A stretch of 64,000 nucleotides of DNA from the NCBI RefSeq assembly GCF_021869535.1, contig NW_026262734.1, forward strand, positions 52,948,001 to 53,012,000, written 5' to 3'. Numbering within the stretch: position 1 is the stretch's first letter; each line of letters starts with the position of its first letter. Made by a program: the position numbers and the translations under genes. This DNA is from Mytilus californianus (lineage: Eukaryota). The notes under the pieces are model-generated. The model was given only the letters and a program-made list of their open reading frames with translations. It ran no database searches and was not told the origin of the DNA. Positions 5,245-56,418 of the stretch are shown here, piece by piece.

Positions 5245-5650
5245 ATATGGTCACTTGGTCTTTTTCCGACCGGCAGTAAAACGCTTGCCAAAGTGGGGCG
5301 TCCGTTTGGCTGTGCGGGATGTATCAAGTTTGCAGCCACGTCCGGTCAGATTGGGGACGTTAAATCCGATGCCTCTTGTACAGAAAGTGCCATGCTCTTT
5401 GCACGTTAAGAACCCTTGCAACAACTCTTTGAGGGGTCCGTAGGTGGCCTGTTGCAAGGCAAACTTTCTGTCCCTATCCAATATATTCTCATTGTCCAGT
5501 GGCAGTCCAAATTTCCCCGACCATCATCCCAGATGGCCTCTATTATTACATACATACCTATTGTATTTATTGGTAACTTGTTTTCGTCCTGAACATTCAT
5601 GAAATATTTGTCACTGGACGTTAAGCAACCAACAATCAATAAATCAATAA
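5245..5650 (+). mobile_element. SINE-like interspersed repeat (Deu/Nin-like core, shared bivalve SINE 3' tail)
   Basis: GC-richer island with GCACGTTAAGAACCC-type core, ending in GAAATATTTGTCACTGGACGTTAAGCAACCAACAATCAAT. The same tail recurs near 56945. Family recognised from memory only. Confidence 0.6.
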
Positions 5651-6819
5651 ATAATCGTCTCAAACAGTTTTCCAATTTTTATATTTCATTTTTATTTAAG
5701 TATGAATTTTTAAGAGTAAATCTTTCTTCCATCATTTTTCTCTTTGCATTTAATCTTTTTTTTAAACATTACAAAAACGTTGTCGTGGTACACATCAGGG
5801 GTTACATTGTGTCCTTTAGCAAAACTAATAGGAGAGGGGATAAGAACAGAAAAACGATCTTCATTGAGTGCCAATAACTCATATATTGAAGCGAACAATG
5901 AAGACTGTCTCGTCTCCGTGTCAACATTTGCTGTTTCAAGTTTATTTATATCTCAAACTGGTATAATAGTTGCCATAAATTAAAGCAAAAATGGATAAAA
6001 AAATGTTGACAACAATTTATTTAAGGATTCAACTTATTTTGGGCGTTTCATTTATCTATTTTTTAGATATTGTTTTGCTAATTGGTTTCGTTATATTTTT
6101 TTTTCATCTACAATTGTCCTAGCAAAAGTCGCAAAAAAATGTGTTAAAATCAGCCATGCGACTTATTTGAAAAGATTTAGCTGAACTTTCTTGTTGATTA
6201 CACATTTCGATCATTCAACTCGTGCATAGATCGTTTTCCCCCTAATGTTTTTTTGACGTATAGATAGCGTGAAATTCTCACTACACCAGGAATCGGATAT
6301 ACATTCCTATTTCGATGGGACAAAACTGCGTATTTATATATCTGATAGGCCAAACGAACGCACCCATTTAGCAAGGGTATACTGTGTATACTGTGGGACG
6401 GGAGAGGTCTCGAGATGTCAATATTTTGATTGTTTGATTTTGAATAAAAGGTGATAATGTACATTAATGCGAGAGCAACACAAATACACAGACATATCAA
6501 AACATTTATAGTCAACTTTCAGTCTTTTTTGTTATAGAAAGATCCGTATACAGAAAAATAATCAGTGAAAACAGCCTAATGACTTAATAATAGTTATACG
6601 GAGTTAACTCAATAATAATTACCGTCAAATATTATATATCCCAAAAGTCACATTTGATTTAATACTATTTACCGTCAAAGATATCCCGACAATCACTAGT
6701 CTCTGGTTGAAAATTTTCACCTGCCCTATTTTAATTTTGATCGGTGAAAATTGAAGGAGTTGTAATATAAACCAGTAGACGAAAAACACTTCACTGTATA
6801 ATAAAACGGTAAAATAAAT

Positions 6820-7030
6820 GATGATAATGGATGACGACCAGCGATAAATAAAAAGAATATTCAGGACGATAACATGTAAATACAATATGAGTATTAACCC
6901 CGCTTTTAACTAGACTGACACGCTGAGTCGGTGTTTTTACACGTAAGTTCCCAAGATATTAGTTCGCACGAAGAAAAGTCACCCGACCCGGACACATTTC
7001 CGACTCTGAGCCGACCAGTCTGTGCTCCTA
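6820..7030 (-). mobile_element. 3' half of a tRNA-derived SINE (Meta/MESC-like core) interrupted by the Mutator element
   Basis: Minus strand reads AGCACAGACTGGTCGGCTCAGAGTCGGAAATGTGTCCG...CTCAGCGTGTCAGTCTAGTTAAAAGCGG...CGTCCTGAATAT, continuing the SINE head found at 56410-56555. Confidence 0.72.
7022..7030 (+). repeat. Left 9-bp target site duplication GTGCTCCTA
   Basis: Identical 9-mer at 56410-56418, each immediately outside a TIR. Confidence 0.93.
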
Positions 7031-7073
7031 GCACAAGGATAATAGTTACGCTGAACGGTGCCCACTGGTCACC
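7031..7073 (+). repeat. Left terminal inverted repeat (43 bp)
   Basis: GCACAAGGATAATAGTTACGCTGAACGGTGCCCACTGGTCACC; reverse complement of 56367-56409 with one mismatch at position 2. Confidence 0.95.
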
Positions 7074-7479: not shown

Positions 7480-10400
7480 CTGCCATTGGTTACCTCTGGT
7501 CACCCTATACAGAAAATAATAGTGCATACAGTTACACTGGTCATTTGATACAAAATGCATAGTAACTTTATTAACCTTACTTCCTTTGCAGATAAATTTA
7601 CAGTGGTTCTTCTAATTAATTGACACATATATAGATATTGAATGGCCCTTAAACAGATATTGAATTTCTATACATCTTGTCACCTTTTACATAATTAATT
7701 GTGGTGACCTCTGGTCACCCAACACATGTATTGAATTGCAATAAACATTATAAGATATTGAATTTGGTTACCTCTTGTCAACCCGGCAAGCCTTCACAGA
7801 TATTGAATTTTGTTGCACCTTGTCACCTTTTACATAATTAATTGTGGTGACCTCTGGTCACCCTACACATATATTCTATTTTTTATCTTTAGACACTGTG
7901 CATAACTATTGAATTTATTTAACTTTAATAACCCTACTTAGATGTTTAATTTGGTAATATATGGACACCCTACCAAGATGTTGTATATGGTTAACCCTAA
8001 TCACTCTACAATGATGTTGAATATGGTTACCTCTGGGCACCCTACAAAGATATTGAATATGGTGACCTCTGGTCACCCTACCAAAATTTTGAACATGGTT
8101 CTTTCTGGTCACCCTACACATATATTGAATAAGGTTACCTCTAGTCATCTTACAAAGATATTGCATATGGTTACCTCTGGTCACCCTTCACATATACTGA
8201 ATATGGAAACCTCTGGTCACCCAACACAGATGTTTGAATTAGTTATAAACTTGCCATCCTACACAGATAATGATCACGGTTATATCTGGACATCTTTCAA
8301 ATACTTTTAATTGAGTTATGTTCGGTTTCAAAACCTACATACTGGCTTTAACCACCTCTTGTTACCCTAAATATGTCTTTATTTTGGTAATCTCTGGTTA
8401 CCCTACTAAGACAAATACAATCAAAACCAAGGAGTAAACAGATATACCAAAAGAAATTTACAACAACATTAAAAAAGTAAGGAACAACAGGAATCTTCTT
8501 AATCATGTCTTGAACGCTCCCATCGTGTGAGTTCTTTCTTAAGTCCGGTAATAATGAAAATGTACTGATGACTGTGCAAGAGTTTTAATATGATTAATCA
8601 TACATAAATTACTAAAATATTGAATTTGGTGACCTCTGGTCACCCTATACATATATGAACTTTAAATACCTCAAGTTACCCTACACAAATACTGAATTGG
8701 GTTACCTCTGGTCACCCTTCACATATTTTGAATGTGGTTACCTCTTATCTTACACAGATAGAAAACTTGATTACCTCTAGTCACCGTGCATAAATATTTA
8801 ATTTGGTTACCTATAGTTAGCCTACTTAAATATTTAATTTTGTAAACTTTGGTCATAAATTGAACGTGGTAACCTCTGATCAACGTACACAAATATTGAA
8901 AAAGGTAACCTCTGGTAAACAATTACAGATATTGAAAATGGTTACCTCTGGTCAACCTACAATAAATTGGCTTTTATTACCTATGGTTACAATTCATAAA
9001 TAATGAATTTGGTAAGCATCGGTTATCCCGGTTCACACTTTTGCGCTACTTTTATAATTAATATAGCAACTTCTGGTCGCTGTACACATACATTGAATTA
9101 TATTGCCATTGTCAACACACACATATATATATAGCAATTGCCTTTTTTGAATGTGGTAACCTCGGGTCGCCATACACAGATATAAAGTTATTTATCTTTA
9201 GACACCATACTTAAATATTGAATGTAGATACCTTTATTAAACCTACTAGTAAGCTGTTTATTTTGGTAATCTCTGGTCACACTGCCAAGATGATGAATGT
9301 GGTTACCTCTGGTCACCCTCCAAAGATATTGAATATGGTTACCTCTGGTCACCCAACCAAAACTTTGAATATGGTTACCTCTGGTCACCCTACACATATA
9401 TTGAATAAGGTTACTTCTGTTCACCCAACCAAAACTTTAAATATGGTTACCTCTGGTCACCCTACACAGATATGGAATAAGGTTACCTCTGGTCACTTTA
9501 CAAAGATATTGCATATGGTTATCTTTGGTCACCTAAAAAGATATTATATGTGGTAACCTCTGGTCTCCCTACACATATATTGACTATGGTTACCTCTGGT
9601 CACCCTACACATATTTTGAACATGGTTACCTCTGGTCACCTTACCAAAACTTTGAATATGGTTACCTCTGGTCACCTAACAAAGATATTGGATATGGTTT
9701 TTTTTGTCATCTAAAAAGATATTGAATGTGGTTACTTCTGGTCACCCTACAAAATATTGAGTATGGTTAGCTCTTGTTACTCTTCACAGATATTGAACAT
9801 GGTAACCTCTGGTCAACCTACAATAAATTGGCTTATGTTACCTATGGTTACAATTCATAAATAATGTATTTGGTTAGCATCTGTTATCCCGGTTCACACT
9901 TTTGCGCTTCTTTTATAATTAATATAGCAACTTCTGGTCGCTGTACACATACATTGAATTATGTTGCCATTGTCAACACATACATATATATATAGCAATT
10001 GCCTTTTTTGAATGTGGTAACCTCGGGTCGCCATACACAGATATAAAGTTATTTATATTTAGACACCATACATAAATATTGAATGTAGATACCTTTATTA
10101 AACCTACTAGTAAGCTGTTTATTTTGGTAATCTCTGGTCACACTGCCAAGATGATGAATGTGGTTACCTCTGGTCACCCTCCAAAGATATTGAATATGGT
10201 TACCTCTGGTCACCCTACAAAGATATTGAATAGGGTGACCTCTGGTCACCCAACCAAAACTTTGAATATAGTTACCTCTGGTCACGGTGCACCCTACACA
10301 TATATTGGATAAGGTTACTTCTGGTCACCCAACCAAAACTTTAAATATGGTTACCTCTGGTCACCCTACACAGATATTGAATAAGGTTACCTCTGGTCAC

Positions 10401-13400
10401 TTTACAAAGATATTGCACATGGTTATCTTTGGTCACCTAAAAAGATATTATATGTGGTAACCTCTGGTCTCCTTACACATATATTGACTATGGTTACCTC
10501 TGGTCACCCTACACATGTTTTGAACATGGTAACCTCTGGTCACCTTACCAAAACTTTGAATATGGTTACCTCTGGTCACCTAACAAAGATATTGGATATG
10601 GTTTTTTTTGTCATCTAAAAAGATATTGATTGTGGTTACTTCTGGTCACCCTACAAAATATTGAGTATGGTTAGCTCTTGTTACTCTACACAGATATTGA
10701 AAATGGTAACCTCTGGTCAACCTGCAATAAATTGGCTTATGTTACCTATGGTTACAATTCATAAATAATGTATTTGGTTAGCATCTGTTATCCCGGTTCA
10801 CACTTTTGCGCTACTTTTATAATTAATATAGCAACTTCTGGTCGCTGTACACATACATTGAATTATGTTGCCATTGTCAACACACACATATATATATAGC
10901 AATTGCCTTTTTTGAATGTGGTAACCTCTGGTCACCCTACACATATATTGAATAAGGTTACCTCTGGTCACCCAACCAAAACTTTAAATATGGTTACCTC
11001 TGGTCACACTGCCAAAATGATGAATGTGGTTACCTCTGGTCACCCTCCAAAGATATTGAATATGGTTACCTCTGGTCACCCTACACAGATATTGAATAAG
11101 GTTACCTCTGGTCCCCCAACCAAAACTTTGAATATAGTTACCTCTGGTCACACTGCCAAGATGATGAATGTGGTTACCTCTGGTCACCCTCCAAAGATAT
11201 TGAATATGGTAACCTCTGGTCACCCTACACATATATTGAATAAGGTTACCTCTGGTCACCCAACCAAAACTTTGAATATGGTTACCTCTGGTCACCCTAC
11301 ACATATATTGAATAAGGTTACCTTTGGTCACCCAACCAAAACTTTGAATATGGTTACCTCTGGTCACCCTACACAGATATTGAATAAGGTTAACTCTGGT
11401 CATTTTACAAAGATATTGCATATGGTTATCTTTGGTCACCTAAAAAGATATTATATGTGGTAACCTCTGGTCTCCCTACACATATATTGACTATGGTTAC
11501 CTCTGGTCACCCTACACATATTTTGAACATGGTAACCTCTGGTCACCTTACCAAAACTTTGAATATGGTTACCTCTGGTCACCTAACAAAGATATTGGAT
11601 ATGGTTTTTTTTGTCATCTAAAAAGATATTGATTGTGGTTACTTCTGGTCACCCTACAAATATATTGAGTATGGTTAGCTCTTGTTACTCTACACAGATA
11701 TTGAAAATGGTAACCTCTGGTCAACCTACAATAAATTGGCTTATGTTACATATGGTTACAATTCATAAATAATGTATTTGGTTAGCATCGGTTATCCCGG
11801 TTCACACTTTTTACGCTACTTTTATTATTAATATAGCAACTTCTGGTCGATGTACACATATATTAAATTATGTTGCCATTGTCAACAAAAATATATAGCA
11901 ATTGCCTTTTCTTAATGTAGTTACCTCGGGTCACCATACACATATATAAAATTATTTATCTTTAGACACCATGCATAAATATTGAATGTAGGTACTTTTA
12001 TTAAACCTACTAAGATGTTTATTTTGGTAATCTCTGGTCACACTACTAAGATGTTGAATGTGGTTACCTCTGGTCACCCTCCAAAAATATTGAATATGGT
12101 TACCTCTGGTCACCCTACAAAGATATTGAATATAGTAACCTCTGGTCAACCAACCAAAATTTTGAATATGGTTACCTCTGGTCACCCTACTAAAATTTTG
12201 AATATGGTTACCTCTGGTCACCTTACAAAGATATTGCATATGGTTATCTTTGGTCATCTAAAAAGAGTTTGAATGTGGTTACCTCTGGTCACCCTACACA
12301 TATATTAAGTATGGTTACCTCTGGTCACTCTACGCATAATTTGAACATGGTCACCTCTGGTCACCCACACAGATATTGGCTATGGTTACCTTTGGTCAAT
12401 CTATAAAAATTTGGCTTATGTTACCTATGGTTACAATTCATAAATAATGAATTTGGTTAGCAATGGTTATCTCGGTGCACACTTTTTGCGCTACTTTTAT
12501 AATTAATATAGCCACTTCTGGTCGATGTACACATATATTAAATTATGTAGCCGTTGTCAACAAATATATATAGCAATTGTTTTTTTTTAATGTGGTTACC
12601 TCGGGTCACCATACACAGATATACATTTATTTATCTTTAGACACCATGCATAAATATTGAATTTAGGTACCTTTATTAACCCTACTTAGATGTTTAATTT
12701 GGTAATCTCTGGTCACACTACAAAGATGTTAAATGTGATTACCTCTGGTCACCGTTCAAAAATATTGAATATGGTTACTTCTGGTCAACTTACAAAGATA
12801 TTAAATAGGGTGACCTCTGGTCACCCTACCACAATTGTGAATATGGTTACCTCTGGTCACCCTACACAGATATTGAATAAGGTTACCTCTGGACACCTTA
12901 CACAGATATTGACTAAGGTAACCTCTGGTCACCTTACAAAGATATTGCATATGGTTACCTCTGGTCACCCACACAGATATTGGCTATGGTTACCTCTGGT
13001 CATCCTACACAGATATTGAAAATGGTTACTTTTGGTCACCCTACAATAAATTGGCTTATGTTAACTATGGTGACAGTTCATAAGATGAATATCGTTGGTC
13101 AATTTAAAAGATATTGAATGTGGTTAACTCAGGTCATTCTACACAGATATTAAATATGTTTACCTCTGGCCCCCCTACACAGATTTCGAATTGGGTAACC
13201 CTTTCATATTATTGAATGAGATTACCTCCGGTCATCGTATACATATATTTACTTAAATTACCTCTGGTCACCCTTTACAGATTTGGAATGTGGTTACCTT
13301 TGGTCACCATACACAGGTATTAACTTTAGGTTCTGGTCACAATTCATAATTAATGAATCTTTATTAGCATCGATTATCTCGTTTCACACTATCCAGATGT
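7480..13400 (+). repeat. Left internal satellite: 36-bp unit (GGTTACCTCTGGTCACCCTACACAGATATTGAATAT-type) in ~0.7-1.0 kb higher-order repeats
   Basis: 36-bp period, seen as 12-aa periodic ORFs on both strands. The higher-order marker ATCCCGGTTCACAC and its variants occur at 9025, 9886, 10790, 11794, 12469 and 13376. Confidence 0.95.
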
Positions 13401-15074
13401 TAAATTTGGTTAACACTTCCCGCAACATTTATATTGAATATGAATATTGCTCATCATAAACAGATAATGATTATGGATATCTCTGGATACCCATCCTATA
13501 ATTTATTTACTTTTGGTAATCTGACGCAAATAATGTCTTAGGCAACCTCTTATTACCCTGAACTGCAATTCATTTTGGTTAAATCTGTTCATCCTATATA
13601 TAATTATATGACTTTTAAGGGGTCTCATGGTTTCTCCGGTTATATACAATTAATAAAAAAAAGATTTTGTTGACATTTTAAAAATAAATATGATATATTT
13701 CACATTCTCATTACAGGGTTTTTTGTTCGTGAATTAAATAGAGGAAATATGACAGGTGTAACAGGCGATTTTGAAGGTAATGGTTACAGTTTCAAACATA
13801 ATTATTTCATTAATCATAGTAGAGGTCATATTAAGACCAATATTCAATTCCTAAAATCAGAATTCGAAACGTAGGGTTGATAGTACAAATCAAATACTTC
13901 AAAAACTAGAAAAACTGCACAAATTCCAAAATTATAGTTAAGGAATGTCAAATTATGATACATTATCGCGGTGTATATTTGAAACATCGTTATTTATTCC
14001 GCCATTTCCATATCTTACAGGTTTGGAAAACTTTAATTTGGAAGACCTCCATGAATTGCGACATGAAGAAAAGGAAGAAGTTAAAAAACAGATTGAAGCC
14101 ATATATATTGAGGCAACCTCTTTGGAGAAAAAAGCCAGAGAATTGGGTATGAATTGTGTTTTCTCATTTATGCCCAAACCGCCACAAATGTCGTGATATT
14201 TTTCATACAGTATTGTATAGATTACGCTGTTTAGATCATACAATTGAGAAATAATTCATTTAGGCTTGAATTTATACTGATTTTACCACGGATTGACCTT
14301 TTATGCTAAATATTTTACAACGACCGATGGCATGGATAATATGCTCTTCATTTTTTAAAACTTTATTCAGCTACGATCAATTATCCTTGGCCAATTTGTA
14401 ATGGCTCAGCGACTGCGTATATATCTTTTTTAAAAGTGTTTCAAAATTAGTATCTTATTCCAACAAATCGAAAATTGTTACTGTTTTTGTTTTTTTGTGT
14501 ACATATGCAAATTGAAAAAATATGATTTATTCTAGGAAATTACACGCACAAATATTATATTTCCCTACCATTTTAGCATGTGATACAAATTCAAAACAGT
14601 ATATTCTTCGCCACGCACAAACCTTAACAGAAAAAGCAAATGAGATGAAAGAAAAGATATGCTTAGCATCAGGTGATTTATTTCTTTATCTGTATTATAT
14701 TATAGATATACATTTATAACACAGTAGTGTTATTTTTATGTTAATACTGTAGACTTTTGTAGTTGAATATATCTGTTGGCACGCAAATTGGAAACTGAAA
14801 AACAGAAAATTCAAAAGGCACTTAATCAAATCCACTTGTCATAACCAAATTGACAAAGCCACGACAATAAACACAAAATCGGGAACAAGACAAACATCAT
14901 TCCACGGAATTGGTTTGCGGTTTATTCCTTACTTTATCATTTGTTTATTATCTCAAAACTAGTGTACATAACACACTTTGGCAGTTCACTTAATACTGAT
15001 CAGTGTTTTATTTCAATTTTCTTATGATGCCCTTTATTAGTAAAAAGAAAGGATTCATATCAAATTTTTACTTC

Positions 15075-15422: not shown

Positions 15423-16511
15423 GGAAATCATTCCAAACACCTGATGAACTACAAATTGCTATAAAGCAATCCATAGCTTCAAACGAGGAACAAACATTAA
15501 TAGTTGAGAGACTTAAGAGGAACTGTTCATCCCATGGCTTAGAATACAGAGGTCAAACACCAGGGAATGGGAATTGTTTTTTTGAAGCAATCACATGCCA
15601 GCTAGATAGAATTGGCGCAGACGTTATTGCTCCCGAACAATTAAGAACAAATGTTGTAAACTACATATCAACACATCCTAGTTTTGAGGTAAACTAATTT
15701 ACTTGTTAAATACATTCACTAATTATCAAACTCCTCCATGGACAGAAACATAAAGAATTAGTTGGACATGTTTTCAGGGGACAAATCAAAACCGTTGGCA
15801 ACAATAGTGGCGCATCAGCACAACTTAAATATATGATTTAAATCAGTTAAGAAGCTATTAACACACAAATACCATCAAAAATACTTCCGACAGAATATTA
15901 ATTTGGAATTGACGTAACTGCCCGTAATACCTGTGATTAATGCAATTTAATATTTAAAGATTTACAAACTGATAAAAGAATAAGCATCAGTTAAGACTTT
16001 CATATCAACCAGAATGCTTTTTTCTGCAGATGTTTAAATAAATCATTTACAGTTAATATAGTACAATGCTAAATAATAGGTATTGACAAAAAACAATAAA
16101 ATAAATAAAAAATGTATGTTATGATCATGATGATTTTTGATAAAATGTAGTTATAAAAGTATTTGTTTTGTATTAATCAATTTCAATGTACAGTAGTTAA
16201 TAAAGACTTATGTAAGTAGCTTTCTTTCAATCAATAGGGCAGTCAAGGCATTGTGTTATTAGAAAACTTCGTTGAAGACAATTTTCCGGACTACTGTGAC
16301 AGGATGTTACAGAATGGAGAGTACGCAGACCATGTTGTGGTCATTGGAATGTCCAGAATGCTACAGAGAGACATAGTTATTGTCACCAGTGCTCCCAGTA
16401 CCAATAATGAGGATAGTGTCCTTTGGGTAACTGGTTGTGATGGTTTTTCCGGTAATCCTATTCTTCTTGGGCACATTTTCGAAAACCACTACCAGTCACT
16501 CCAGCCAAAAG
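15423..16511 (+). CDS. UIM-like motif plus OTU cysteine protease domain (two exons) within the transposase gene
   Basis: DELQIAIKQSI (LxxAxxxS), then RGQTPGNGNCFFEAI (Cys 15575-15577), GEYADHVVVIGMS and ILLGHIFENHYQSL (His 16487-16489). Confidence 0.88.
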
Positions 16512-17989
16512 GTAACTGATAATAGAAATTATATAATTTATGATTATCTCTCAGAAAGAGATACCTTTACAGTTATAGTTTAAAGTAACGCATATGTAAA
16601 TCTATGTTAAAAAAATAATGTCTACGGTTGATAGTTGGGAAATATCTTATAACACGAGATATAGTTGTGGAATCTGTTAATCTAATGATTCCAATAAAAT
16701 TTGATAATTTGTTTAGATTATTTACAAAAAGTCATACTCTTCTTGTCTGACTTCATCGGGCATGATCACCTATTCCAATGACGTCATTATATAAAATTCA
16801 GAGGAAAGCAAAATATTTGTCGTCATTATTATATTTCGACTAAGGAAGGACTTCGATCAAGTGACCCACGTTTGGTAAAATGTTGATCAATATTGTGCTC
16901 AGAAAGGAATAAATACCATAGAATCAGTAAAATGTCCATATTTATATATTTGATATTTTATCAAATTGTTTTTGGCAAAACGAAATGAAATAAGTTTACT
17001 TTAACTTTGTTCTTCATTAGGCATTTTCACATTTTCGATAGGAGCGACCCTAATGAGTCTACGTAGACGGAACACATTTTTAAGCCTTATATCTTTGAAT
17101 TAGGTAGATCATCACTATATATCTGTATATCGCCATCTTGAATTGTAAAATAGCAGCACACAAGCGACAAAGTTCTTTATTTAAAACTGCAAATTTTGAG
17201 ACATAAATGCTATTCATTTTTAAAACTCTTGTTTGATAAATGTAAATAAGTGCATTATATCATTGAAAAAATAAGTGTTATTGTAAAAACCGGCTATCAG
17301 TCTTTGTTTGATTCAATTTGTCAACTGAGCTAATTAACGGAAGATAACTTATTTGGTGAATTTTCTTTAAAGGAATGATAATGAAATTTCTATTTTTCGC
17401 AAGAAAACGGGATTTATTTTCACCCTTTTTCTTTTGATTTTCTACTAAATTGTGGCTATGTATAAGAAAATTATGTCTGAGAAAAAAATTCAGTAATGAT
17501 CTACCTTAAATCGTTTTACGTTTTTTCACTGTAGACTGTTTTTGAAAAAGAAAAATATTAAAGGAAGTATTGTAAATGTGATATTTATATAAGTTTACTT
17601 TACATAATTTGATTACATAATTACTGCATTGATATCAATCAGCATTAGAGGCAAAGTTTTTCTAATTGGCAAATACATTCAGATGCAAAAAAGCTTTATT
17701 TTAACAGATAAACTAGTATTAATTATAAATTATTACGTTTTTTTGTTAATTGTAACGTTTATACAACAAATTTTAGGTGACAGTGGCAAACTTGATCACC
17801 ACACGAATGATAAGCATGCAACAAATGATGATAACCTTTTTATTCCTGTTGATGTGTGCAACGAAGAACTCAGCAACTATAACATGACACATGATGTTGA
17901 AGGTACAATATTGTTCCTTCGGAAATGTTCACTAGCCATACTTATCATCAGTGATTTTAAAATGATTTGAATAACTTATAATTAGCGGG

Positions 17990-18115
17990 AATTTCTCGCT
18001 ACATTGAAGACCTGTTGGTGACCTTCTGCTGTTGTATTTTTCTACGGTCGGGTTGTTGTCTCTTTGACACATTCCCCATTTTTATTCTCAATTTTATTAT
18101 AAAAAGTAAAAGTCA
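17990..18115. mobile_element. End of a high-copy mussel-type non-autonomous repeat (Helitron/Helentron-like) in an intron
   Basis: TACATTGAAGACCTGTTGGTGACCTTCTGCTGTTG...GGTCGGGTTGTTGTCTCTTTGACACATTCCCC; a related fragment lies near 28880. Recognised from memory only. Confidence 0.45.
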
Positions 18116-18639
18116 TTTTATCATCCACTTTTATACATAACCTACCATTAGTATACATAGACGTCAATATTCTATAAAAAATAATTAGTTGTATTATAAA
18201 GTTGCAGTTTATAGATACTACCAATGAGCATGACTTTATCGAAGGCTTTTCGAAAGTCAACAATGCATTTAAAACACATTTTATTTCCATTTCTCCGTAC
18301 TTCCAACGACAAAATTATTATACTTAAATTTGACTTTACATGCGAAATTTAAAGTGGTTTATCTAACGTCATTTTGTCGCAATAGTTGTATCATGTGTCC
18401 TCCTTTTTTATTATTAACTGTAACGTCTATGTTATACTGCAAATGCGTTTTATTATTGTATTAATACTGTGTCGCAAAGTATACTTATGTTTATAATTGT
18501 ATTTTTTGTAACTCGTTAATTGTTTTGTCAGAGTTAAGCCATTTTCCATTATTTGCTTTTATAGTGCGTCTTTTCTTTTAATGTTTTACTGCTGTTTTAC
18601 GTGTAATGTGCAGGTTTGCGCCTGTTGAAACGTTCAAAT

Positions 18640-18905
18640 ATATTATATGCAACTATTTTTTTGTGTTATTAAAATTTGCTGTTACAAAATATTAGAAATT
18701 ATTATAAATTAAGGAATGTATCTCCCTCATGCAAAGCTCTGATTTCTTTCACGGATTTGGCTATACTTTTTGGACCTTTTGGATTATAGCTCTTCATCTT
18801 TTATATAAGCTTTGGATTTCAAATAATTTGGCAACGAGCATCACTGAAGAGACATGTATTGTCGAAATGCGCATCTGGTGCAAGAAAATTGGTACCGTTA
18901 ATTTT
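18640..18905 (+). mobile_element. Penelope/retrozyme-type non-autonomous repeat with hammerhead-ribozyme core
   Basis: CTGAAGA-GACA-TGTAT-TGTC-GAAA-TGCGC-ATCTG-GTGCA at 18844-18882, inside a repeat I recall as abundant in Mytilus. Confidence 0.55.
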
Positions 18906-21664
18906 ATTGTGCAGAGGTCGTTTGTTGGTATTTTTCATCGATGTCATCATTTGTTTTTAAATTTATAACAAGTAAACTAGTGTTACTACATAGCAATACA
19001 TATGCTTTTCTTACCCTAGATATGCCATTCGTAGAGTTTGTGAGATCCACCTTCATCAAAAAACGGAAAAATGGTACTGATTGCATTGTTAGACGTTTAA
19101 GGTATGGGAAAGTTTATTTTAATCGAAAATATATAGTTTTGAAATCAACTAATTTCTATATGCTACCTTCTTCCTATGACCTAATGGTTTCAATAGAATT
19201 AAAAGAAAATAAATATCTATCACAGCAAAACATATACCTTCAGATTATTGAAAAATAACTCTGTTTGTTATTCAGAATAATTTTACTGAACTTCAAATAG
19301 TCTTACAAAATATAAAAATCACTGTATTAACAAAGGGATCATTTTTAAGAACTCTATTTTTTGGGGGACAATTTAAGTCTATTATACTATGGTGTAACTC
19401 TTTCCAATGTTTCTGAATATATGGATGAATTTTTGGTCACACTATTACACTGAAACATATTGTTGTGTTTTATCAGCTAGCATTTGTGACTTTGGCTTCA
19501 GTTTTTGCTTATCATTCAACAGAAATGAAGTGGACAACGAAGACGTCATAACCAAGCATGTAATGGATATAACAATCACAGGGAATTTTATTCACAGGAA
19601 AGCAAATAAAACCACATTGCAATACAGGTGTGAAAGGTAACTTTAATCATCTAAGTCGATAATCTATAAAGGAATTTTATCTTGAAATAAATCCACTCTT
19701 GTTTTTCTCCAAATAAACAATAAATAGAAAAAGAGAACAACTTTAGTAACAATCGTAAACATTCTTAAAGAATCTATTTACATATCTTACATATCAAATT
19801 TGCAAGACAATGCTGAGTTAAAAGATACATTTGTGACAGAAAATAATATTGGTATAGTTTTGAAAGAGATAAGTTGTATAATCTTGACTTCTGGTTGTAT
19901 GTTATTCTCTTGCTTTTTTTCAATAATATACGTTTTGTGTTATAGTTTATACAGTAATTATAGTATGGCCTTTAATAACAGATAGTTCCGAAAGCTTTTA
20001 AACGTATTGAACTATGAATTTTCTGAAATATTGCACAACATTTTTCTCTTTGGTTATCTATGAAGTTAAGATGCATATTTGTTTAAATTTTATCATGTTT
20101 ATTTTAGATGTAATAAACCAAGAGGACAAAAAAACAGGTCCTTTGAATACCAGGGCAAATAATTGTCAGGCATATGTGTCATTCCAGTATGTTATGTTAA
20201 TGTAATATTCATTTATCTCTTTTACTTTTCTTTTATGATGCAAAACTATAAATTAATTTATAACTTTTAAGCGTTTGAACATCATTATTTATTGATCCTA
20301 ACATCCTTGTTGTAGTTAAGCAACCTTTTGTCCGTGTCTTGAGAGTGGGAATTAAATGCATTTATCATATTACTAAACCAAACACATTTAAACAGGTATT
20401 CACCGGGCATACACCATTCATGAGTTTCTGGCTAGTTTACCTGACATTTCATGTGATGAGCGGGTCAATACACCCTGTCATGGTTGAAATTATTATATAG
20501 AGAATCCCTGTATCAAATTATATAGAATTTGGTATATATCATTTTGATGATAAGTTATCAATTTACAAGGAGAACACAACAACCATAGCAGTTATTCGAA
20601 GTAGCCTTACACATATTTTTAGAAAAAATAATCCTTTTCTTCAAGTCCGATAGATCTTAAATATTGCTTACAAGCTGTTTTAATAAATATAATAATGATA
20701 CGTTTGGCAAAACAGTACTAACCAGTGACGTTGTACATGTAAAAAAAAATCATTAAAGGGCATGTTAATATCTTCTTACACAGATTTTTGACCCATTTGA
20801 GTAAAAAAGCAGTAATAATTCGGCAACAACTAAAACACAATGGACACAGTTTACAGATAAAAGAGGAAAAACACCAATCACGCCCAGATCACAGCTTACT
20901 GCTTTATATAGATGCTTTACTTGATCAGGTATTCATGTCGTCGGTATTATATATAATTTATTGCTCATAACGAATTGACTTATTTTTCAATTATAAGTTG
21001 CTGGCACTCTTATAAACACAATGATAATAAAAATTGTGTATGCTGACATTATTGGAGTTTAATATTTTCTCAACCATTCTGTTCTTTTCGATGTCTGTGT
21101 TTGTCTTCCGGCGCATTTTTTCATAATTTGCAAAGATTATAATAAATGAATAGGTTGAAATAAATCAAAAATAAAATGATTAGGATAAAATTGGCTTGCC
21201 AGAGAGTCATTAATGCATTTACATAAATATCGGACGCTTGTATGAAATATTTTAATGAAAAAACCAGTTTAAAGCTGAATAGCATTGATGATAAAATATT
21301 CTAGAAGACATATATTTTTACAATGACATATATTGATACAACGACATATTTTGTGTTGATTTGAAAAAATCCTTAAGCTCAAAAAGATTTTAACTAAATT
21401 TGAAATTAGTTGTAATTGACACGAATTTAATTTTATTTCATTATCAATAGGGGAAAAAACCCATGGAAATATTGTGCAAAGCATGGAAATGGGCTCGAGA
21501 TCAAGGGCATTTTGATGTGCACGATAGAAGATACTATCTGACACCAGTTGACATTAAGAATATATGTCAACGTTACAAAATGGATAAGAGGTATCAAAAC
21601 ATAATCAAAAGATTTACTTAAAATATGTACTTACTACTTTGTTCTTCTAAAAAATCCAAAGAAA

Positions 21665-22560: not shown

Positions 22561-23222
22561 GTACTGTTGACATTGATTTTGTATATGTCAGTACTGGTAT
22601 TGATCTATGATATTTCCTCATTTGTTTTAGAATTCACCAGAATGATGCTGTAGCTGTACACGAGCTATGCACACAAATACTGAAGGAAGAGATACTTTTC
22701 TACCAAGAATTGAAAGAGTAATTATTCTTATATAATAATGTACTTTTGTAAATTTTAATAACTGATATAAGCATAATGCTGATAAAGAGTAATTCTGAAA
22801 TTACTGATTGATACCCTGTTTTGTTCTTCAGACATGACTGGATTGCCTTATGTTCAAATAGTTTTTATAGTACTCGTCTGTCCAATTTCGTATATGATTT
22901 TGTCTGTAAAATGTTTCAATGAGAGCTGTACAGATGAGTTTTCTGTAGACTGAACGTATATCTGACTCCTCATAATAGATGATTTGTATTTTTGGTTTTT
23001 ATCCTTTTGAGTGTTTCAGTGCTACACTTGTTCACAAGTCATATATTTTGTCAATATATTTTACATTTTTGTCTTTTTCAGTTTTAATAGAGGTTATTTA
23101 ATATGAGTACAATGTAGCTAGTTTGTCGTCTTCTTTTCCATTAAATGGACATGATTTCAACATAAAATATATAATTCATACTCATACTTTTGGTCATTAA
23201 ATATGTAACATTTACATTGTAG

Positions 23223-26200
23223 GGGAGTACAGCCATTAGTAATTATTTACCAGAATGAAGCACAAAGAAAAAGAATGGTGAAACTAGCAGAAAATGTGGT
23301 GTTTTTAGATGCTACATATAAAGGTATATACTTGTATATAATCATGGAAATTTCAATTTAAAATATTGATACGTTTAAAAGAATTGAACTGTGTGACAAT
23401 AAACTTACAACATGTTTTTTGTTTGTTTTAAGGATTAACTGCCTATGGTTATTCATTCTATGCTCTTGTTGCAAGAGATGAACAGCAAGGCCGAGGCACT
23501 CCTCTTTCGTACTGTATCTCGTCAGATGATACTGGTGAAGTTGTCAAAATATTTCTGAGATCTCTGAAGACTACGGCTGAAAATCATGGATTTGATTTCC
23601 GTCCAAGGTTTGTGGGTATCAAAGTTGACAATATTTCGAATTCAATATCATTGCTTATTAACACTTTTCATTTTCGTCTTATTATTTGTTTACAATTAGT
23701 AACATTATTCGGAGTCAACATCAAATCTGATATGGATATAAAAGATAAATAAATACCATTCAATTATATGTTTTAATTAATTTGGCTGTAAAAATTACAG
23801 GTTAAACTATGACATTATTCACATATTCGTGCAGTGATAGTTATTTGAAATGACAAATACACAATGCTATGAAAGATTCATCTAAAGAAACATTTTTTCA
23901 TGCATATCAAAATTAATACAATTAAGGTCCACAATAATTTCAGTTGAATTTTGGCAAAGAATATTAGATAAATAATTTTTGCATAATAATATTTTTCTAA
24001 TGGACTAATGAAACTTACAAACACATCAATTTCCTTAAAATCTTTTGAGTGTGATCTATAGCAAGGCTTTAAAACCAAAGCATTTAAGATTAAAGCATAG
24101 TCAGGTTTATACATAACATAATAATTAAAGCTTTTTTAGGCTTGTTTCCAAACTTTTTAATCACAAATTAAAAATCTAATTGATATAAAAAAAAAAGAAT
24201 TTACATAATTATTTACAAATTAACAAATAGTATTATAGAATAAAACCAATATGAGATAAAGATATAGATTGTTGATACTGCAGTGTTACATTTTGTTTAC
24301 TAGATCTTTTATGGTAGACAGAGATACCAAAGAAATCAGCGCAATTAATGAAGTATTCCCAAACAGCTCTGTTTTACTTTGCTGGTTTCATGTTTTACAG
24401 GTATTATATTATTCAATATATGTATCATACATTTTACCTTATTCTTTATGGGAAAAAAATCAGTTATTAAATGAGAGTTATTCTGTGAAGTTTCACTCTT
24501 TTGGATCAATAAGTATTAATTGCATTGGATTTAACATTTTATATCTTTTTTTTGTGTTTATAAGCTTGAGGTCAGTTTTGAATTAATAAATAGACTCTTT
24601 CGCATTAATACTTTCATAGATCAAATATTATCTTGTTGAAAAATAATTAGTCATGATATATTCAAGACAATGTTTAATTATTATTATCTTTAAGACATGA
24701 ACTAAATATAAATGATTTGATTTACAGGCTGTGTACAGATTTTTGAATAAAAAAGAATCTGGTGTATCAGGACCCATGCACGCACATACCAGAAAAAAAG
24801 TTATTGACTATATTAGAACTATGAAAATATGTACCAAGGTAATCAAACGTGATAGTTAAGACAAATAAAATATAATGAACCTATGATACCACAGTGAAAT
24901 ATAATAATTTTTAAATTGGTCAATAATTTTGAGTTGGTCCTGACAAATTCAAATAATGTATTCGAATATTTAATATGTACTAGGTGAATGTTAATTTACA
25001 TAGTATAACTTGACCTGCTTCTGATAATAACAGTTTTATATGCAGAGGATGTGAAACATTGTTAAAAAATTAATCACGAGTGTGTTGCCTCACAATGAAA
25101 CACGATTGGTTATTGATATGTTTATATTATAAGAAAAATCCCTGTAGAAATGAAACCTCAGTGGGATCTTTTTCTCCTTTTCCAACATTGTAATTGTTTT
25201 AATATCAAAATCATATCAACAAGATTTTTCAAATAGAGTCAATTAAAACGCAATAATAATAATAATAAAAAATACAATCAATGAATTTTGGTTGATAAAA
25301 GATGAAAAAAAAACACTGAAACATATAGAAATGAATCTCTATTGAATTAAAGCAGTAAAATAATTTGGAAAGTACAAATAGTTGCTTAATGCGATTTAAA
25401 GATCTTACCTATAAATATACAATGCTTATGAGTACACGCGTGTTTAATCTATAAAATCTGATTTTATACTCAAAAGAAATGTGTCAATATAATTTTTCCT
25501 CAGAAAGAAGACTTTTCTCAAAAAGTTTAAATGTTGCAAGAGAAGATGCCTTCCAAACAAATAGCAGACTACTTGTTAGACAACTGGTGTACTGACAAGT
25601 GGGGATGTCGATGGGCCAACTATGGAAGACATTTTTTTCATGAAGATCAAGATACAAATAACTTAGTTGAAAGGTTATTAATACATTTTATTACTATACA
25701 CCTTATATTTTACAAGATCGAAATTTTAAGCATCATCTAATTATCATCTGTTTGATAATAGTAACTAAGTATATTTTATTTTGGGGATAAATTTTCTGAA
25801 CTGTCTCTGTTTTTATGACCTGATTTATAAAAAGTATTACACTTTGTCTAAATCCTACTTCTTCATGGGTAACCAAAGACAAAGCAGGATATAAACTTTA
25901 CAATTTTTAACAATATGGAGAGGATTTTTGCCGTTCTTTCATGATAGGGTTATGCAAATTTAATACAAATATCATAATTGTCAATGCAAGTCGATAATTA
26001 CATAAAAGCAGACAAAATGAAAAAATGTAGTCTAGCAAAACCTGATGTGTATGAGGATATTAAAACAAAAAAATATAATGCTACTTATAACATTCAAATG
26101 TTAACACATTAATATTTTATGTACTTTCTATTTGTACATTCAAATATAAATCATAAATTCAAAGTCCTTAACATTTTGTCATTTTCAGGTTTTTCCTGGG

Positions 26201-26290
26201 CATGAAATACCATTTCCTTGGTGGGTATGCCAATAGCAGAGTAGAGGACTTACTACTCCTTCTCCATGGAAATGTAACTATGTTTTATGA
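23223..26290 (+). CDS. MULE transposase DDE catalytic core exons
   Basis: VVFLDATYK (D1, 23308-23310), SFMVDRDTKEISAINEVFPNSSVLLCWFHVLQ (D2 at 24317-24319 plus CxxH), and QDTNNLVERF (E, 25669-25671). Confidence 0.92.
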
Positions 26291-26497: not shown

Positions 26498-27832
26498 CTA
26501 TCTGGATGAACTCGCAAAGATTGGTCGCCTGAAAAATATGGGAGGACAAAGGAGAGACAAAAGTAAATTGACAGCAGAGAATATGCTCAAGGCAGGACTC
26601 GACCAAACTGTGCAATGGACTTCATCCACAGAATGCACTGTTCCATCACAGACAGCATTTGGGACGATTTATAATGTGGACATTGTCAATGAAGTGTGCA
26701 ATTGTCCAGCAGCAACAACAAGAGGTATTTTTTTAGCATCTTAAGTCAGTCCAACAATGTTTAAAAGTACACCATCAAGTATGAATTGTTATAATCAAGA
26801 TTAGTAATTTCGGGTACCGTATATGGTTCCCGGAAATGCTTATCCTTCTAAAGCACCTAATTTCACTTCAGGTATTCAGTGGAATTCGTGTTGTTTATTA
26901 TTGTTTTTTACTGTTGTTGTAAATGTCTTATGGTTTTATGAGTCTCCTCGGTTTTGATTGTTTTTGTCTTCCAACAAGGCATTATCAACCGTCATAAGGT
27001 TATACAAGTGCAAATAATCATTTTCCTCATCAAATTTTCTAAAACAATGCGATCCAATTTAAGTAAATCTTTACTCAACGTTCATTAGTGGTTTTGTTTA
27101 AAGTTTGTACAATTGAAAGTGAACCATAAAAGTACAAGTTATTTATGTTCCATTCTCTACTATTTTTCAGGAATGTGTAAGCATGTTCATTTAGCTGAAT
27201 TGATTGCTTCTAAAAGGAACATCGACCTTACTGTAGAGCGCAGATCAGAAGCAATGGATGTATTTAATGCAGAACAATATTTTTATGACAGTGATAACAA
27301 CCAGGTAGAGGTTTTGTCAAGATTGGGAAATGTATCAGTTGTTAATTTGACCTCTTTCAAATGTACATGTTTTGCCAATAGCCATGGTAAACATTGTGTT
27401 TGTGTGATGGTAGCAAAACTGGTAGTTCCATCACCTGACATAGAGTCTACCTCAATTGATGAAACAAAACAACAATTAATTGAAGACAAAGAAACAACCG
27501 ACCAGGCTATTAAAAGAAAAATTGAGGAAATCAATTTATATGTAAACAATAAAAATTTCCAGACAATTGACGTGAAAAAAAAGAAAGCTATTTGTCAAGC
27601 ACTCACAACGGCATTACATATTTGTAAGACAACCAACTTTTCCAAAACAACAAGAAAGCGAAAGCAGCAACCGCTGTTTCCAAGCAGAAAATCCAAAAGT
27701 CCAAAAACTGATCATGACTATTCAGTAAGCCGAAAGTGTGTTCTGAAAAAACGGGGGCGTAAAGTTAATGATGATGGCAGTTTCAAATCTACGCACAGAA
27801 AGAAAGGATCCATTCGTAAACCATTTCAATGA
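26498..27832 (+). CDS. C-terminal transposase exons: two SWIM-type zinc fingers and a basic tail
   Basis: VCNCPAATTR|GMCKHVH across the 26724/27171 splice; FKCTCFANSHGKHCVC; basic NLS-like RKRK and KKRGRK; stop at 27830-27832. Confidence 0.85.
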
Positions 27833-56366: not shown

Positions 56367-56409
56367 GGTGACCAGTGGGCACCGTTCAGCGTAACTATTA
56401 TCCTTGTCC
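56367..56409 (-). repeat. Right terminal inverted repeat (43 bp)
   Basis: GGTGACCAGTGGGCACCGTTCAGCGTAACTATTATCCTTGTCC. Confidence 0.95.
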
Positions 56410-56418
56410 GTGCTCCTA
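56410..56418 (+). repeat. Right 9-bp target site duplication GTGCTCCTA
   Basis: Identical to 7022-7030. Confidence 0.93.

What the first reader, a model, noticed from the sequence alone, without database searches (positions are those of the whole stretch)
15423..16511. UIM-like motif and OTU protease fused N-terminally to a Mutator transposase
Seen: PDELQIAIKQSIAS (15440-15481) fits the UIM pattern LxxAxxxS directly before an OTU domain with Cys and His retained. The usual GDGNC loop reads GNGNC. All exons splice in frame toward the transposase. Inference: the transposase could bind and remove ubiquitin to stabilise itself or to edit chromatin at its target sites.
Basis: partly seen in the sequence, partly recalled or inferred. 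Interest (0 to 1): 0.75.

Follow-up and report, generated by a model that had tools for sequence, protein, structure and literature searches.

The report
OTU-bearing transposase of giant mussel MULE
Two exons in the California mussel genome encode a ubiquitin-removing (OTU) protease domain that is spliced onto the transposase gene of a very young 49-kb Mutator transposon. This copy is broken, and protease-transposase fusions of this general kind are already known.

Summary
Exons 15423-15688 and 16238-16511 (+) encode a genuine OTU domain with its Cys and His kept (Pfam; AlphaFold model, Z 17 to OTUD3). The LxxAIxxS helix sits just before the OTU core and recurs in the closest paralogues. No UIM profile recognises it.

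The organism is Mytilus californianus. The gene lies inside a 49,379-bp Mutator-like element (7031-56409) with 43-bp TIRs and a 9-bp TSD. At least five insertions are about 99% identical.

One spliced RNA contig joins OTU exon 5 through four zinc-finger exons to the first MULE exon, across six GT..AG introns. A 20-exon model would give 1,068 codons: OTU, WRKY/GCM1-like finger, DDE, SWIM.

No examined copy is intact. This copy has an extra C in the exon-9 A-run, which leaves a 388-aa OTU-only ORF, and a TAA in exon X6. Copy L001 is one homopolymer base from an open frame. RefSeq annotates separate genes.

The fusion reading is therefore supported for the family but not for this copy. Deubiquitinase and UIM function are inferred. 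OTU-transposase fusions are known (Medicago MULEs, Ginger1, Helitrons), so this is a new variant. The scan had already noted another copy of this element 41 Mb away.

The parts
7022..7030 (.). Left 9-bp target-site duplication, GTGCTCCTA
   Evidence: Identical to 56410-56418
7031..7073 (+). Left terminal inverted repeat (43 bp) of the 49,379-bp Mutator-like element
   Evidence: 42 of 43 bases match the reverse complement of 56367-56409. Homology in all four other copies starts exactly here.
13749..13776 (+). Exon 1, carrying the ATG
   Evidence: RefSeq models P0001 and P0121 mapped to the window
14021..14146 (+). Exon 2 (N-terminal helical, charged region)
14577..14672 (+). Exon 3
15423..15688 (+). 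Exon 4: UIM-like helix and the N-terminal half of OTU with the Cys loop GNGNC
15440..15481 (+). UIM-like motif PDELQIAIKQSIAS
   Evidence: Predicted helix (model residues 11-22, pLDDT about 90) lying outside the OTU core, which aligns from residue about 24. Conserved in the closest paralogues. No Pfam UIM hit.
15575..15577 (+). Codon of the catalytic Cys (Cys135 of P0121)
   Evidence: Invariant column C56 in alignment A1. Aligns with the OTUD5 DGAC Cys.
16238..16511 (+). Exon 5: C-terminal half of OTU with the His loop ENHYQSL
   Evidence: RNA reads of X21 and a contig of X18 lie on it.
16487..16489 (+). Codon of the catalytic His (His256 of P0121)
   Evidence: Invariant column H177 in A1. Aligns with the OTUD5 HYNS His.
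17777..17902 (+). Exon 6 (linker)
   Evidence: Joints 16511>17777 and 17902>19020 in the X9 contig
19020..19101 (+). Exon 7 (start of the zinc-finger region)
   Evidence: Joints; RefSeq model
19523..19636 (+). Exon 8 (…LQYRCE, first Cys of the finger). RefSeq P0001 stops by reading through its AG|GTAACT donor.
20108..20186 (+). Exon 9, with a variable A-run. This copy has an extra C at 20127, giving an in-frame TAA at 20160-20162.
   Evidence: Joints 19636>20108 and 20186>20784. Copy lengths are 79 (window), 78 (L001) and 77 (L002, L004).
20784..20928 (+). Exon 10 (…KAVIIRQQLKHNGH…, His pair of the finger)
   Evidence: Joints 20186>20784 and 20928>21451. Open only in the MULE frame.
21451..21590 (+). 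Exon X1. RefSeq's separate MULE model starts at the ATG at 21463.
   Evidence: Joint 20928>21451. L004 gene call starts here and carries PF10551 and PF21056.
22631..22717 (+). Probable exon X1b (87 nt, in frame)
   Evidence: Present in M. edulis models P0139 and P0133. AG/GT borders. Not covered by the reads laid.
23223..23323 (+). Exon X2, with the first catalytic Asp (VVFLDATYK)
   Evidence: P0142 and P0140
23433..23607 (+). Exon X3
24304..24400 (+). Exon X4, with the second Asp and the CWFH motif (FMVDRD…LLCWFHVLQ)
   Evidence: Weak Pfam MULE hit on this piece. RefSeq P0141.
24728..24838 (+). Exon X5
   Evidence: P0141
25504..25673 (+). Exon X6, with the catalytic Glu (NNLVE). This copy has a nonsense TAA at 25528-25530.
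   Evidence: P0141 gives the exon start. The codon is TAA here, AAA in L001 and L004, and CAA in M. coruscus.
26189..26290 (+). Exon X7
26498..26724 (+). Exon X8 (first half of SWIM, CNCPAATTR)
27171..27832 (+). Exon X9 (CKHVH of SWIM, a second Cys-rich motif, a basic tail and the stop codon)
56367..56409 (-). Right terminal inverted repeat
   Evidence: In copy L003 the same end is followed by its own 9-bp TSD, TTCAATTCC.
56410..56418 (.). Right 9-bp target-site duplication, GTGCTCCTA

Best explanation
The two exons are exons 4 and 5 of the transposase gene of a giant, recently active Mutator-like transposon of Mytilus californianus (window 7031-56409).

In the family's functional form a roughly 20-exon mRNA encodes one protein of about 1,068 residues. 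Its parts, in order, are a helical N-terminus, a UIM-like helix, an OTU cysteine protease, a WRKY/GCM1-like C..C..H..H zinc finger, a MULE DDE core and a SWIM finger.

This particular copy is a dead derivative. An extra C in the exon-9 A-run ends the frame after 388 residues, so it can yield only an OTU protein without transposase. A TAA also interrupts the DDE region.

Inferred, not shown: the OTU domain is an active deubiquitinase, since its fold, Cys and His are kept. It would travel with the transposase and remove ubiquitin or a ubiquitin-like modifier from the transposase itself or from chromatin and repair factors at the donor or target site. That would favour transposition. The N-terminal helix would be an accessory substrate-contact element of this OTU subfamily. 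The module was probably captured from a host OTU family that marine invertebrates fuse to NACHT, Roc-COR, GTPase, TPR and Schlafen scaffolds.
For: The OTU domain is real: Pfam, fold, and invariant Cys and His.

It lies in a transposon:
- 43-bp TIRs and perfect 9-bp TSDs, both here and in copy L003.
- Five insertion sites with different flanks at about 99% identity.
- Internally deleted derivatives.
- MULE and ZSWIM1-3 RNaseH-like Pfam hits on RefSeq models of the copies.
- D, D and E motifs visible in the sequence.

One transcript: the X9 contig carries six consecutive GT..AG joints from exon 5 to exon X1.

One ancestral frame:
- Exons 9, 10 and the start of X1 are open in the MULE frame for about 68 codons upstream of the ATG that RefSeq uses. 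The chance of that is about 0.005.
- The finger's first Cys is in exon 8, in the OTU frame. Its second Cys and the His pair are in exons 9 and 10, in the MULE frame.
- L001 has 19 of 20 exons intact and differs by one A in X1.
- The lesions differ between copies.

Other support:
- M. edulis model P0139 joins OTU exon 5 to MULE exons.
- Against M. coruscus copies, the OTU-gene exons (exons 1-5) diverge 1.6% and introns 4.8% (p 2e-5). MULE exons diverge 3.2% against 5.0% (p 0.003).
- The nearest relatives of the OTU module are host multidomain proteins.
- OTU or Ulp1 domains on transposases are documented (PMC1702500, PMC2836005).
Against: - No examined copy has the full frame open.
- The exon-9 A-run has three states, and the in-frame state occurs in only one of four copies.
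- RefSeq models stop in exon 8 or 9 and start a separate MULE gene at 21463.
- The transcript evidence is one contig at depth 5 from a run whose RNA status is a guess. That contig also carries an extra A in exon 7.
- True RNA raw reads (X21, 6% sampled) touched exon 5 only.
- No fused protein of about 1,000 aa exists among 1.84 billion representative proteins.
- The zinc finger has no Pfam hit.
- The residue two positions after the catalytic His is Gln, where many OTUs have Asp or Asn.
- Protease activity and substrates are untested.
Confidence: 0.65

Rival explanations
1. There are two genes, as annotated. The element encodes an accessory OTU/zinc-finger protein of about 380-390 aa, analogous to a second gene such as MURB of MuDR, and a separate transposase starting at the ATG at 21463. 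The spliced contig would be read-through or a non-coding isoform.
For: - RefSeq models P0001, P0121 and P0122, and the separate MULE call in L004.
- Stop codons in exon 9 in three of four copies.
- An ATG 12 nt into exon X1.
- The intron between exons 4 and 5 is retained at higher depth than the spliced contig in X9.
Against: - A transposase starting at 21463 would have only about 100 residues before the first Asp and no DNA-binding domain.
- The C..C..H..H finger would be cut in two between the genes.
- About 68 codons upstream of that ATG are open in the same frame.
- The exons are spliced together.
- L001 reads through exons 9 and 10 in frame.
Confidence: 0.2
2. The frame break is programmed. 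In the A7 form of exon 9, the zero-frame heptamer A_AAA_AAA would allow a -1 ribosomal frameshift or polymerase slippage. Most product would then be the short OTU protein and a minority the OTU-transposase fusion, as with OrfA/OrfAB of bacterial IS1 and IS3.
For: - Two of four copies (L002, L004) carry A7. There the zero frame ends 4 codons later, and a -1 shift enters the open MULE frame exactly (my reading of the codons).
- The break lies between the accessory domain and the transposase.
Against: - The window would need +1 and L001 would need no shift, so the site is not uniform.
- L002 and L004 carry other lesions or deletions.
- Homopolymer length errors and mutations are the simpler cause.
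- No downstream stimulatory structure was looked for.
- No such mechanism is known for eukaryotic DNA transposons (my knowledge).
Confidence: 0.07
3. The OTU domain acts as a processing protease rather than a deubiquitinase. It would cut the polyprotein to release the N-terminal part from the transposase, as Babu et al. suggested for Medicago MULE-OTU fusions.
For: - The suggestion in PMC1702500.
- Viral OTU-like proteases combine polyprotein processing with deubiquitination (established knowledge).
Against: - No cleavage site resembling the ubiquitin C-terminus (a Gly-Gly motif) was found or searched for between the domains.
- The nearest relatives are C- or N-terminal modules of host signalling proteins, not polyproteins.
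- The best structural matches are cellular deubiquitinases.
Confidence: 0.08

Closest known systems
Medicago truncatula MULE transposases with an OTU-superfamily protease (Babu et al. 2006, PMC1702500)
   Same: A Mutator-like transposase with a WRKY-GCM1-type finger, DDE core and SWIM, fused to an OTU papain-like protease in a recently expanded family.
   Different: There the OTU is C-terminal and the host is a plant. Here it is N-terminal, upstream of the DNA-binding finger, the host is a bivalve, and the gene has about 19 introns.
Ginger1 transposases with a C-terminal OTU or Ulp1(+PHD) domain (Bao, Kapitonov and Jurka 2010, PMC2836005)
   Same: Animal cut-and-paste transposases (Hydra, Aplysia, aphid) carrying an OTU or Ulp1 protease. 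That paper also notes Ulp1 in animal Mutator elements and proposes a role for the ubiquitin/SUMO pathway in transposition.
   Different: A different superfamily (Gypsy-integrase-like DDE). The protease is C-terminal, and each Ginger1 has either OTU or Ulp1. This element carries OTU on the transposase and, apparently, a separate convergent Ulp1-PHD gene.
Helitron/Helentron RepHel proteins with an OTU-like protease (PMC6431247; PMC2836005)
   Same: An OTU domain as an accessory domain of an animal DNA-transposon protein.
   Different: Rolling-circle elements with no DDE transposase, TIRs or TSDs.
Plant KI-MULEs/VANDAL with Ulp1-like protease (Hoen et al. 2006, cited in PMC2836005)
   Same: Large MULEs carrying a protease that removes a ubiquitin-like modifier.
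   Different: Ulp1 (C48) rather than OTU (C85), and plants.
Human OTUD1 and OTUD5 (OTU plus UIM)
   Same: The OTU core fold (Z 15.7-17). A short helix next to the catalytic domain with the sequence pattern of a UIM.
   Different: In OTUD1 and OTUD5 the UIM is C-terminal to the OTU domain (my knowledge). Here the helix is directly N-terminal and is not recognised by the UIM profile.

Membership tests
OTU cysteine proteases (Pfam PF02338, MEROPS C85) | Profile match above the curated cutoff | tested here: met
   37.7 bits against a cutoff of 23.3 on spliced RefSeq protein P0001. The halves alone score 14.8 and 21.2 bits.
OTU cysteine proteases (Pfam PF02338, MEROPS C85) | Catalytic Cys at the start of a helix and catalytic His near the C-terminus | tested here: met
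   C135 and H256 are invariant in 16 relatives and align with the OTUD5 Cys and His.
OTU cysteine proteases (Pfam PF02338, MEROPS C85) | Acidic or amide third residue (Asp three residues before the Cys, or Asp/Asn two residues after the His) | tested here: inconclusive
   Asn three residues before the Cys (GNGNC). The family alternates Asp and Asn there, and wMelOTU has GNGSC. Two residues after the His is Gln (HYQ), conserved in the subfamily.
OTU cysteine proteases (Pfam PF02338, MEROPS C85) | OTU fold | tested here: met
   AlphaFold2 pLDDT 89. OTUD3 4bou Z 17.0 with 139 residues aligned; Otu2, OTUD1, OTUD5, wMelOTU and nairovirus vOTUs also match.
OTU cysteine proteases (Pfam PF02338, MEROPS C85) | Isopeptidase activity on ubiquitin or ubiquitin-like modifiers | not testable with these tools
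   Needs an enzyme assay.
Ubiquitin-interacting motif (UIM, Pfam PF02809) | Profile match | tested here: not met
   No UIM hit at E up to 1 on exon 4 or up to 10 on the 29-aa peptide and on the P0003 homologue. No PDB chain at E up to 10.
Ubiquitin-interacting motif (UIM, Pfam PF02809) | Consensus acidic-acidic-hydrophobic-x-x-Ala-hydrophobic-x-x-Ser-x-x-acidic on a single exposed helix | tested here: inconclusive
   DELQIAIKQS fits the core. The trailing acidic residue is missing here (S-I-A-S) but present in P0003 (S-L-A-D). A helix is predicted outside the core. Its exposure could not be measured.
Ubiquitin-interacting motif (UIM, Pfam PF02809) | Binds ubiquitin | not testable with these tools
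   Needs a pull-down or NMR.
Mutator/MULE DNA transposons | Terminal inverted repeats | tested here: met
   43 bp, 42 of 43 bases.
Mutator/MULE DNA transposons | Target-site duplication of 8-11 bp, typically 9 | tested here: met
   GTGCTCCTA here and TTCAATTCC in L003.
Mutator/MULE DNA transposons | MULE DDE transposase domain (PF10551) with the D, D, E and C/H motifs | tested here: met
   PF10551 and PF21056 on the L004 RefSeq model and on P0139. VVFLDATYK, FMVDRD..LCWFH and NNLVE seen in the window. Only a weak hit (E 0.038) on a single exon.
Mutator/MULE DNA transposons | Multiple near-identical copies at different sites | tested here: met
   The window plus L001-L004 have five different left flanks at about 99% identity. 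The RefSeq cluster of the MULE part has 16 members.
Mutator/MULE DNA transposons | Intact transposase in this copy | tested here: not met
   Extra C at 20127 and TAA at 25528-25530.
WRKY-GCM1/FLYWCH-type DNA-binding finger of MULE transposases | C..C..H..H pattern on four strands, N-terminal to the DDE core | tested here: inconclusive
   The pattern YRC…NNCQAYV…KHNGH is seen in L001's exons 8-10. There is no Pfam hit. The fold was not predicted because the spliced sequence has no reference.

The most novel reading that the evidence does not exclude
The A-run in exon 9 is a programmed frameshift or slippage site. It would let one mRNA give mostly a free OTU deubiquitinase and occasionally the OTU-transposase fusion. 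That is an IS-like OrfA/OrfAB control of transposition in an animal DNA transposon.
Probability: 0.07. Interest if true: 0.8.

Novelty: new variant of a known kind. Interest (0 to 1): 0.5.

Why it matters
Ubiquitin- and SUMO-type proteases recur on unrelated transposons (MULE, Ginger, Helitron), yet nobody has shown what they do for transposition.

This family offers a very young set of copies, about 99% identical and carrying target-site duplications, in an animal with RNA data. Natural variants uncouple the protease from the transposase: OTU-only copies, MULE-only copies, and a copy that is nearly intact. Exon conservation suggests the OTU part is under constraint.

That makes the family a usable system for asking whether a transposon-borne deubiquitinase protects the transposase, edits chromatin, or counters host defence.

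The case also shows that RefSeq splits the gene, so fusions like this one are probably under-counted in invertebrate genomes.

Tried and rejected
- Pfam on single exons gave only sub-threshold OTU and MULE hits. The spliced RefSeq proteins were needed.
- The UIM was sought with Pfam at E up to 10 and with a PDB peptide search. Both gave nothing.
- The zinc-finger exons and exon X1 gave no Pfam hit.
- A domesticated single-copy host gene was considered and rejected because of the TIRs, TSDs and multiple copies.
- I first placed the exon-9 donor at 20137 and the exon-X6 acceptor at 25543. The reads and RefSeq P0141 corrected them to 20186 and 25504. The second correction exposed the TAA at 25528-25530, so my earlier count of 655 open codons holds only with the weaker acceptor.
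- M. coruscus copies L005 and L006 were fetched to test whether the ORF is intact in another species. Their exons carry many 1-nt indels, probably from assembly quality, so they were used only for substitution rates. Codon changes were 14 synonymous against 30 non-synonymous, which is near neutral.
- Raw RNA reads of X21 were too sparse (6% sampled) to show any joint.
- Ulp1 pieces on the minus strand gave no Pfam hit.
- Rfam found nothing for the highly expressed intronic repeats.
Full report
**What is there.** Frame 3 of 15425-15688 and frame 1 of 16238-16510 on the + strand give two open pieces. They read …TPDELQIAIKQSIAS…GQTPGNGNCFFEAI…THPSFE and GSQGIV…ILLGHIFENHYQSLQPK. Both have AG/GT borders, and the intron between them is phase 0. 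Each half gives a sub-threshold Pfam OTU hit.

A search of 1.84 billion representative proteins with exon 4 found P0001 at 100% identity. P0001 is RefSeq XP_052097435.1 of Mytilus californianus. On it, Pfam OTU scores 37.7 bits against a cutoff of 23.3.

An AlphaFold2 model of residues 80-270, built on 16 relatives, has pLDDT 89 and pTM 0.88. It matches OTUD3, yeast Otu2, OTUD1 and OTUD5 at Z 15.7-17, followed by wMelOTU and the nairovirus vOTUs.

Cys135 (15575-15577) and His256 (16487-16489) are invariant in the alignment. The Asn in GNGNC replaces an Asp that alternates with Asn across the family. The active Wolbachia enzyme wMelOTU has GNGSC at this spot. Two residues after the His is Gln, where OTUD5 has Asn; this Gln is conserved in the subfamily. 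The domain therefore looks catalytically competent, but that is an inference.

**The UIM-like motif.** PDELQIAIKQSIAS is at 15440-15481, as reported. In the model it is a confident helix (residues 11-22). It lies directly before the part that superposes on cellular OTU cores, which starts at residue about 24.

The closest relatives keep P-[DE]-[DE]-L-x-x-A-[IL]-x-x-S at the same distance from the Cys loop. The best UIM-like example is the M. californianus SLIP-GC-like GTPase P0003, with SPEDLDKAIKQSLAD. More distant relatives have a different helix there.

Pfam's UIM profile does not score either peptide, and a PDB peptide search found nothing. The motif is thus a conserved accessory helix of this OTU subfamily with a UIM-like pattern. 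Ubiquitin binding is not shown.

**Context: a giant Mutator element.** Four other loci of the same species were fetched through RefSeq proteins of the same 90% cluster. They are about 99% identical to the window, and in every case homology starts at window 7031.

- The left end (7031-7073) and the reverse complement of the right end (56367-56409) match in 42 of 43 bases.
- Both ends are flanked by GTGCTCCTA.
- The internally deleted copy L003 has the same ends and its own 9-bp duplication, TTCAATTCC.
- All five left flanks differ.

The element is 49,379 bp. It contains the OTU gene, the MULE exons at 21.4-27.8 kb and long satellite arrays. On the minus strand near 45.7-48.8 kb there are Ulp1-like His and Gln..Cys boxes and a Cys-rich PHD-like piece. 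I saw those motifs directly, but Pfam did not confirm them on the short pieces.

The MULE identity rests on:
- PF10551 and PF21056 hits on RefSeq and M. edulis models of the copies.
- The motifs VVFLDATYK, FMVDRD…LLCWFH and NNLVE.
- A SWIM CxC…CxH split across the last intron.

Related copies occur in M. coruscus (91-95% DNA identity), M. edulis, M. trossulus and M. galloprovincialis.

**One gene or two?** RefSeq models the OTU part as a protein of 371-382 aa. P0001 ends by reading through the AG|GTAACT donor of exon 8, and P0121 ends in exon 9. In copy L004, RefSeq starts a separate MULE gene at the ATG that corresponds to 21463.

I laid four runs on 15640-21639. One 857-nt contig of run X9 (depth 5.2) joins 16511>17777, 17902>19020, 19101>19523, 19636>20108, 20186>20784 and 20928>21451. 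All six joints are GT..AG. The contig runs 145 nt beyond exon X1.

OTU exon 5, the four following exons and the first MULE exon therefore occur on one spliced molecule. The caveats are:
- X9 is only guessed to be RNA.
- It is one contig.
- It carries an extra A in exon 7.
- The same run holds the unspliced intron between exons 4 and 5 at higher depth.
- True RNA raw reads (X21, 6% sampled) touched exon 5 only.

**The reading frame.** I built a 20-exon model from three sources: the read joints; RefSeq P0141 for exon X6; and M. edulis models P0139 and P0133 for an 87-nt exon at 22631-22717. An uninterrupted frame under this model would be 3,207 nt, or 1,068 codons.

Exons 8-10 carry a C..C..H..H pattern (…LQYRCERC…NNCQAYV…KAVIIRQQLKHNGH…). 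It resembles the WRKY-GCM1/FLYWCH finger that sits N-terminal to MULE cores (PMC1702500). Pfam does not recognise it.

The first Cys of this pattern is in the OTU frame, and the rest is in the MULE frame. About 68 codons upstream of the RefSeq ATG are open in the MULE frame, which has a chance of about 0.005. A transposase starting at 21463 would lack any DNA-binding domain. Together these points argue that the ancestral product was one protein.

No copy examined is intact, however:

| Copy | Lesions |
|---|---|
| Window | Extra C at 20127 in the exon-9 A-run, giving TAA at 20160-20162 and a 388-aa ORF. TAA at 25528-25530, where L001 and L004 have AAA and M. coruscus has CAA. |
| L001 | One base short in the A-run of exon X1; otherwise all 20 exons are open. 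|
| L002 | A7 in exon 9 (one base short) and a large internal deletion. |
| L004 | A7 in exon 9 (one base short), a partial deletion of exon 5 and a stop in exon 6. |

The lesions differ between copies, as expected for recent decay from an intact master. The exon-9 state is the exception. It is A7 in two copies, A8 in one, and A-C-A7 here, so the ancestral state is ambiguous. In the A7 form the zero-frame heptamer A_AAA_AAA would allow a -1 shift into the MULE frame. I keep that as a low-probability novel reading.

**Constraint.** Against M. coruscus copies, the OTU-gene exons (exons 1-5) differ at 1.6% of sites and introns at 4.8% (odds ratio 0.33, p 2e-5). MULE exons differ at 3.2% against 5.0% (p 0.003). 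Codon changes are 14 synonymous to 30 non-synonymous, close to neutral. The signal is therefore modest and comes from comparing decayed copies.

**Origin of the module.** The nearest relatives of this OTU, at 31-47% identity across the domain, are modules of large host proteins in bivalves, a brittle star and amphioxus. Those proteins carry NACHT-LRR, Roc-COR, TPR, Schlafen, TNFR, kinase or dynamin-like GTPase parts. None of the nine long hits scanned has a MULE domain. No fused protein of about 1,000 aa with near-identity to exon 4 exists in the library. Capture of a host OTU exon pair by the transposon is the simplest reading; this is inferred.

**Mechanism.** Three things are shown: an OTU fold with Cys and His kept, its position on the transposase mRNA upstream of the DNA-binding finger, and the element's recent mobility. 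The rest is inferred. The OTU would remove ubiquitin or a ubiquitin-like modifier from the transposase or from chromatin and repair proteins where the transposase binds, as Bao et al. proposed for Ginger1 (PMC2836005). Alternatively it would process the polyprotein, as Babu et al. proposed (PMC1702500). Nothing here separates these two.

**What is known.** Fusions of OTU to transposon proteins are documented: Medicago MULEs (C-terminal OTU), Ginger1 (C-terminal OTU or Ulp1), and animal Helitrons and Helentrons. Ulp1 is known in plant and animal Mutator elements.

What is new here:
- The OTU is N-terminal, ahead of the finger.
- It carries a UIM-like helix.
- The host is a bivalve.
- The gene has about 19 introns.
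- It sits in a 49-kb element that apparently also carries a convergent Ulp1-PHD gene.

This is a new variant of a known kind.

**Earlier notes of this scan.** Another copy 41 Mb away had already been described as a giant MULE with OTU and Ulp1, and as an OTU-UIM-MULE fusion (s1-330625, s1-330639).

Noticed in passing
window 7031-56409: A 49,379-bp Mutator-like element with 43-bp TIRs and a perfect 9-bp TSD. At least five insertions are about 99% identical, including deletion derivatives: L003 is about 14.5 kb, and L002 lacks 21.2-36.2 kb. This is far larger than the MULE sizes quoted in the giant-transposon review (PMC6431247).
   Followed up: yes
window 7480-13400 (+); 32.9-34.2, 35.7-36.0, 42.2-44.3 and 51.3-51.9 kb (-): 36-bp satellite arrays sit inside the element in opposite orientations on the two sides of the genes. 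Translated, they give runs such as VTSGHPTKILNM, which produce the longest mechanical ORFs in the window.
   Followed up: partly
window 36216-42359: About seven tandem copies of an approximately 803-bp unit, 93-98% identical to one another and to copy L002.
   Followed up: no
window 45740-45886, 47490-47660, 48629-48760 (minus strand): Ulp1-like boxes (…NDGKCHWVAVV…, …PLQNDFSSCGVYCLK…) and a Cys-rich PHD-like piece, convergent with the OTU-MULE gene. Pfam gave no hit on these short pieces.
   Followed up: partly
window 5221-5657; L001 19091-19520; L004 20189-20610; L005 18851-19702: A repeat of about 430 bp lies outside the element here. It is inserted at two different intron positions in copies L001 and L004, and it is also present in M. 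coruscus. It looks like a small mobile element active after the copies separated.
   Followed up: no
window 17985-18098 and 18657-18910: Intronic stretches with very high depth in all RNA runs (word depth in the thousands) and loose ends on both sides, so they are pieces of abundant unrelated repeat transcripts. There is no Rfam match.
   Followed up: partly
L002 1-26664: Copy L002 lies inside the range of a minus-strand gene whose product has a Phage_integrase (tyrosine recombinase) domain. It may be a Crypton-like element or a host gene with the MULE in an intron.
   Followed up: no
window 20124-20137 and 21451-21462: The A-runs in exons 9 and X1 differ in length between otherwise near-identical copies (A7, A8 or A-C-A7; A5 or A6). 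These may be real mutations or assembly errors, and they decide the reading frame.
   Followed up: partly
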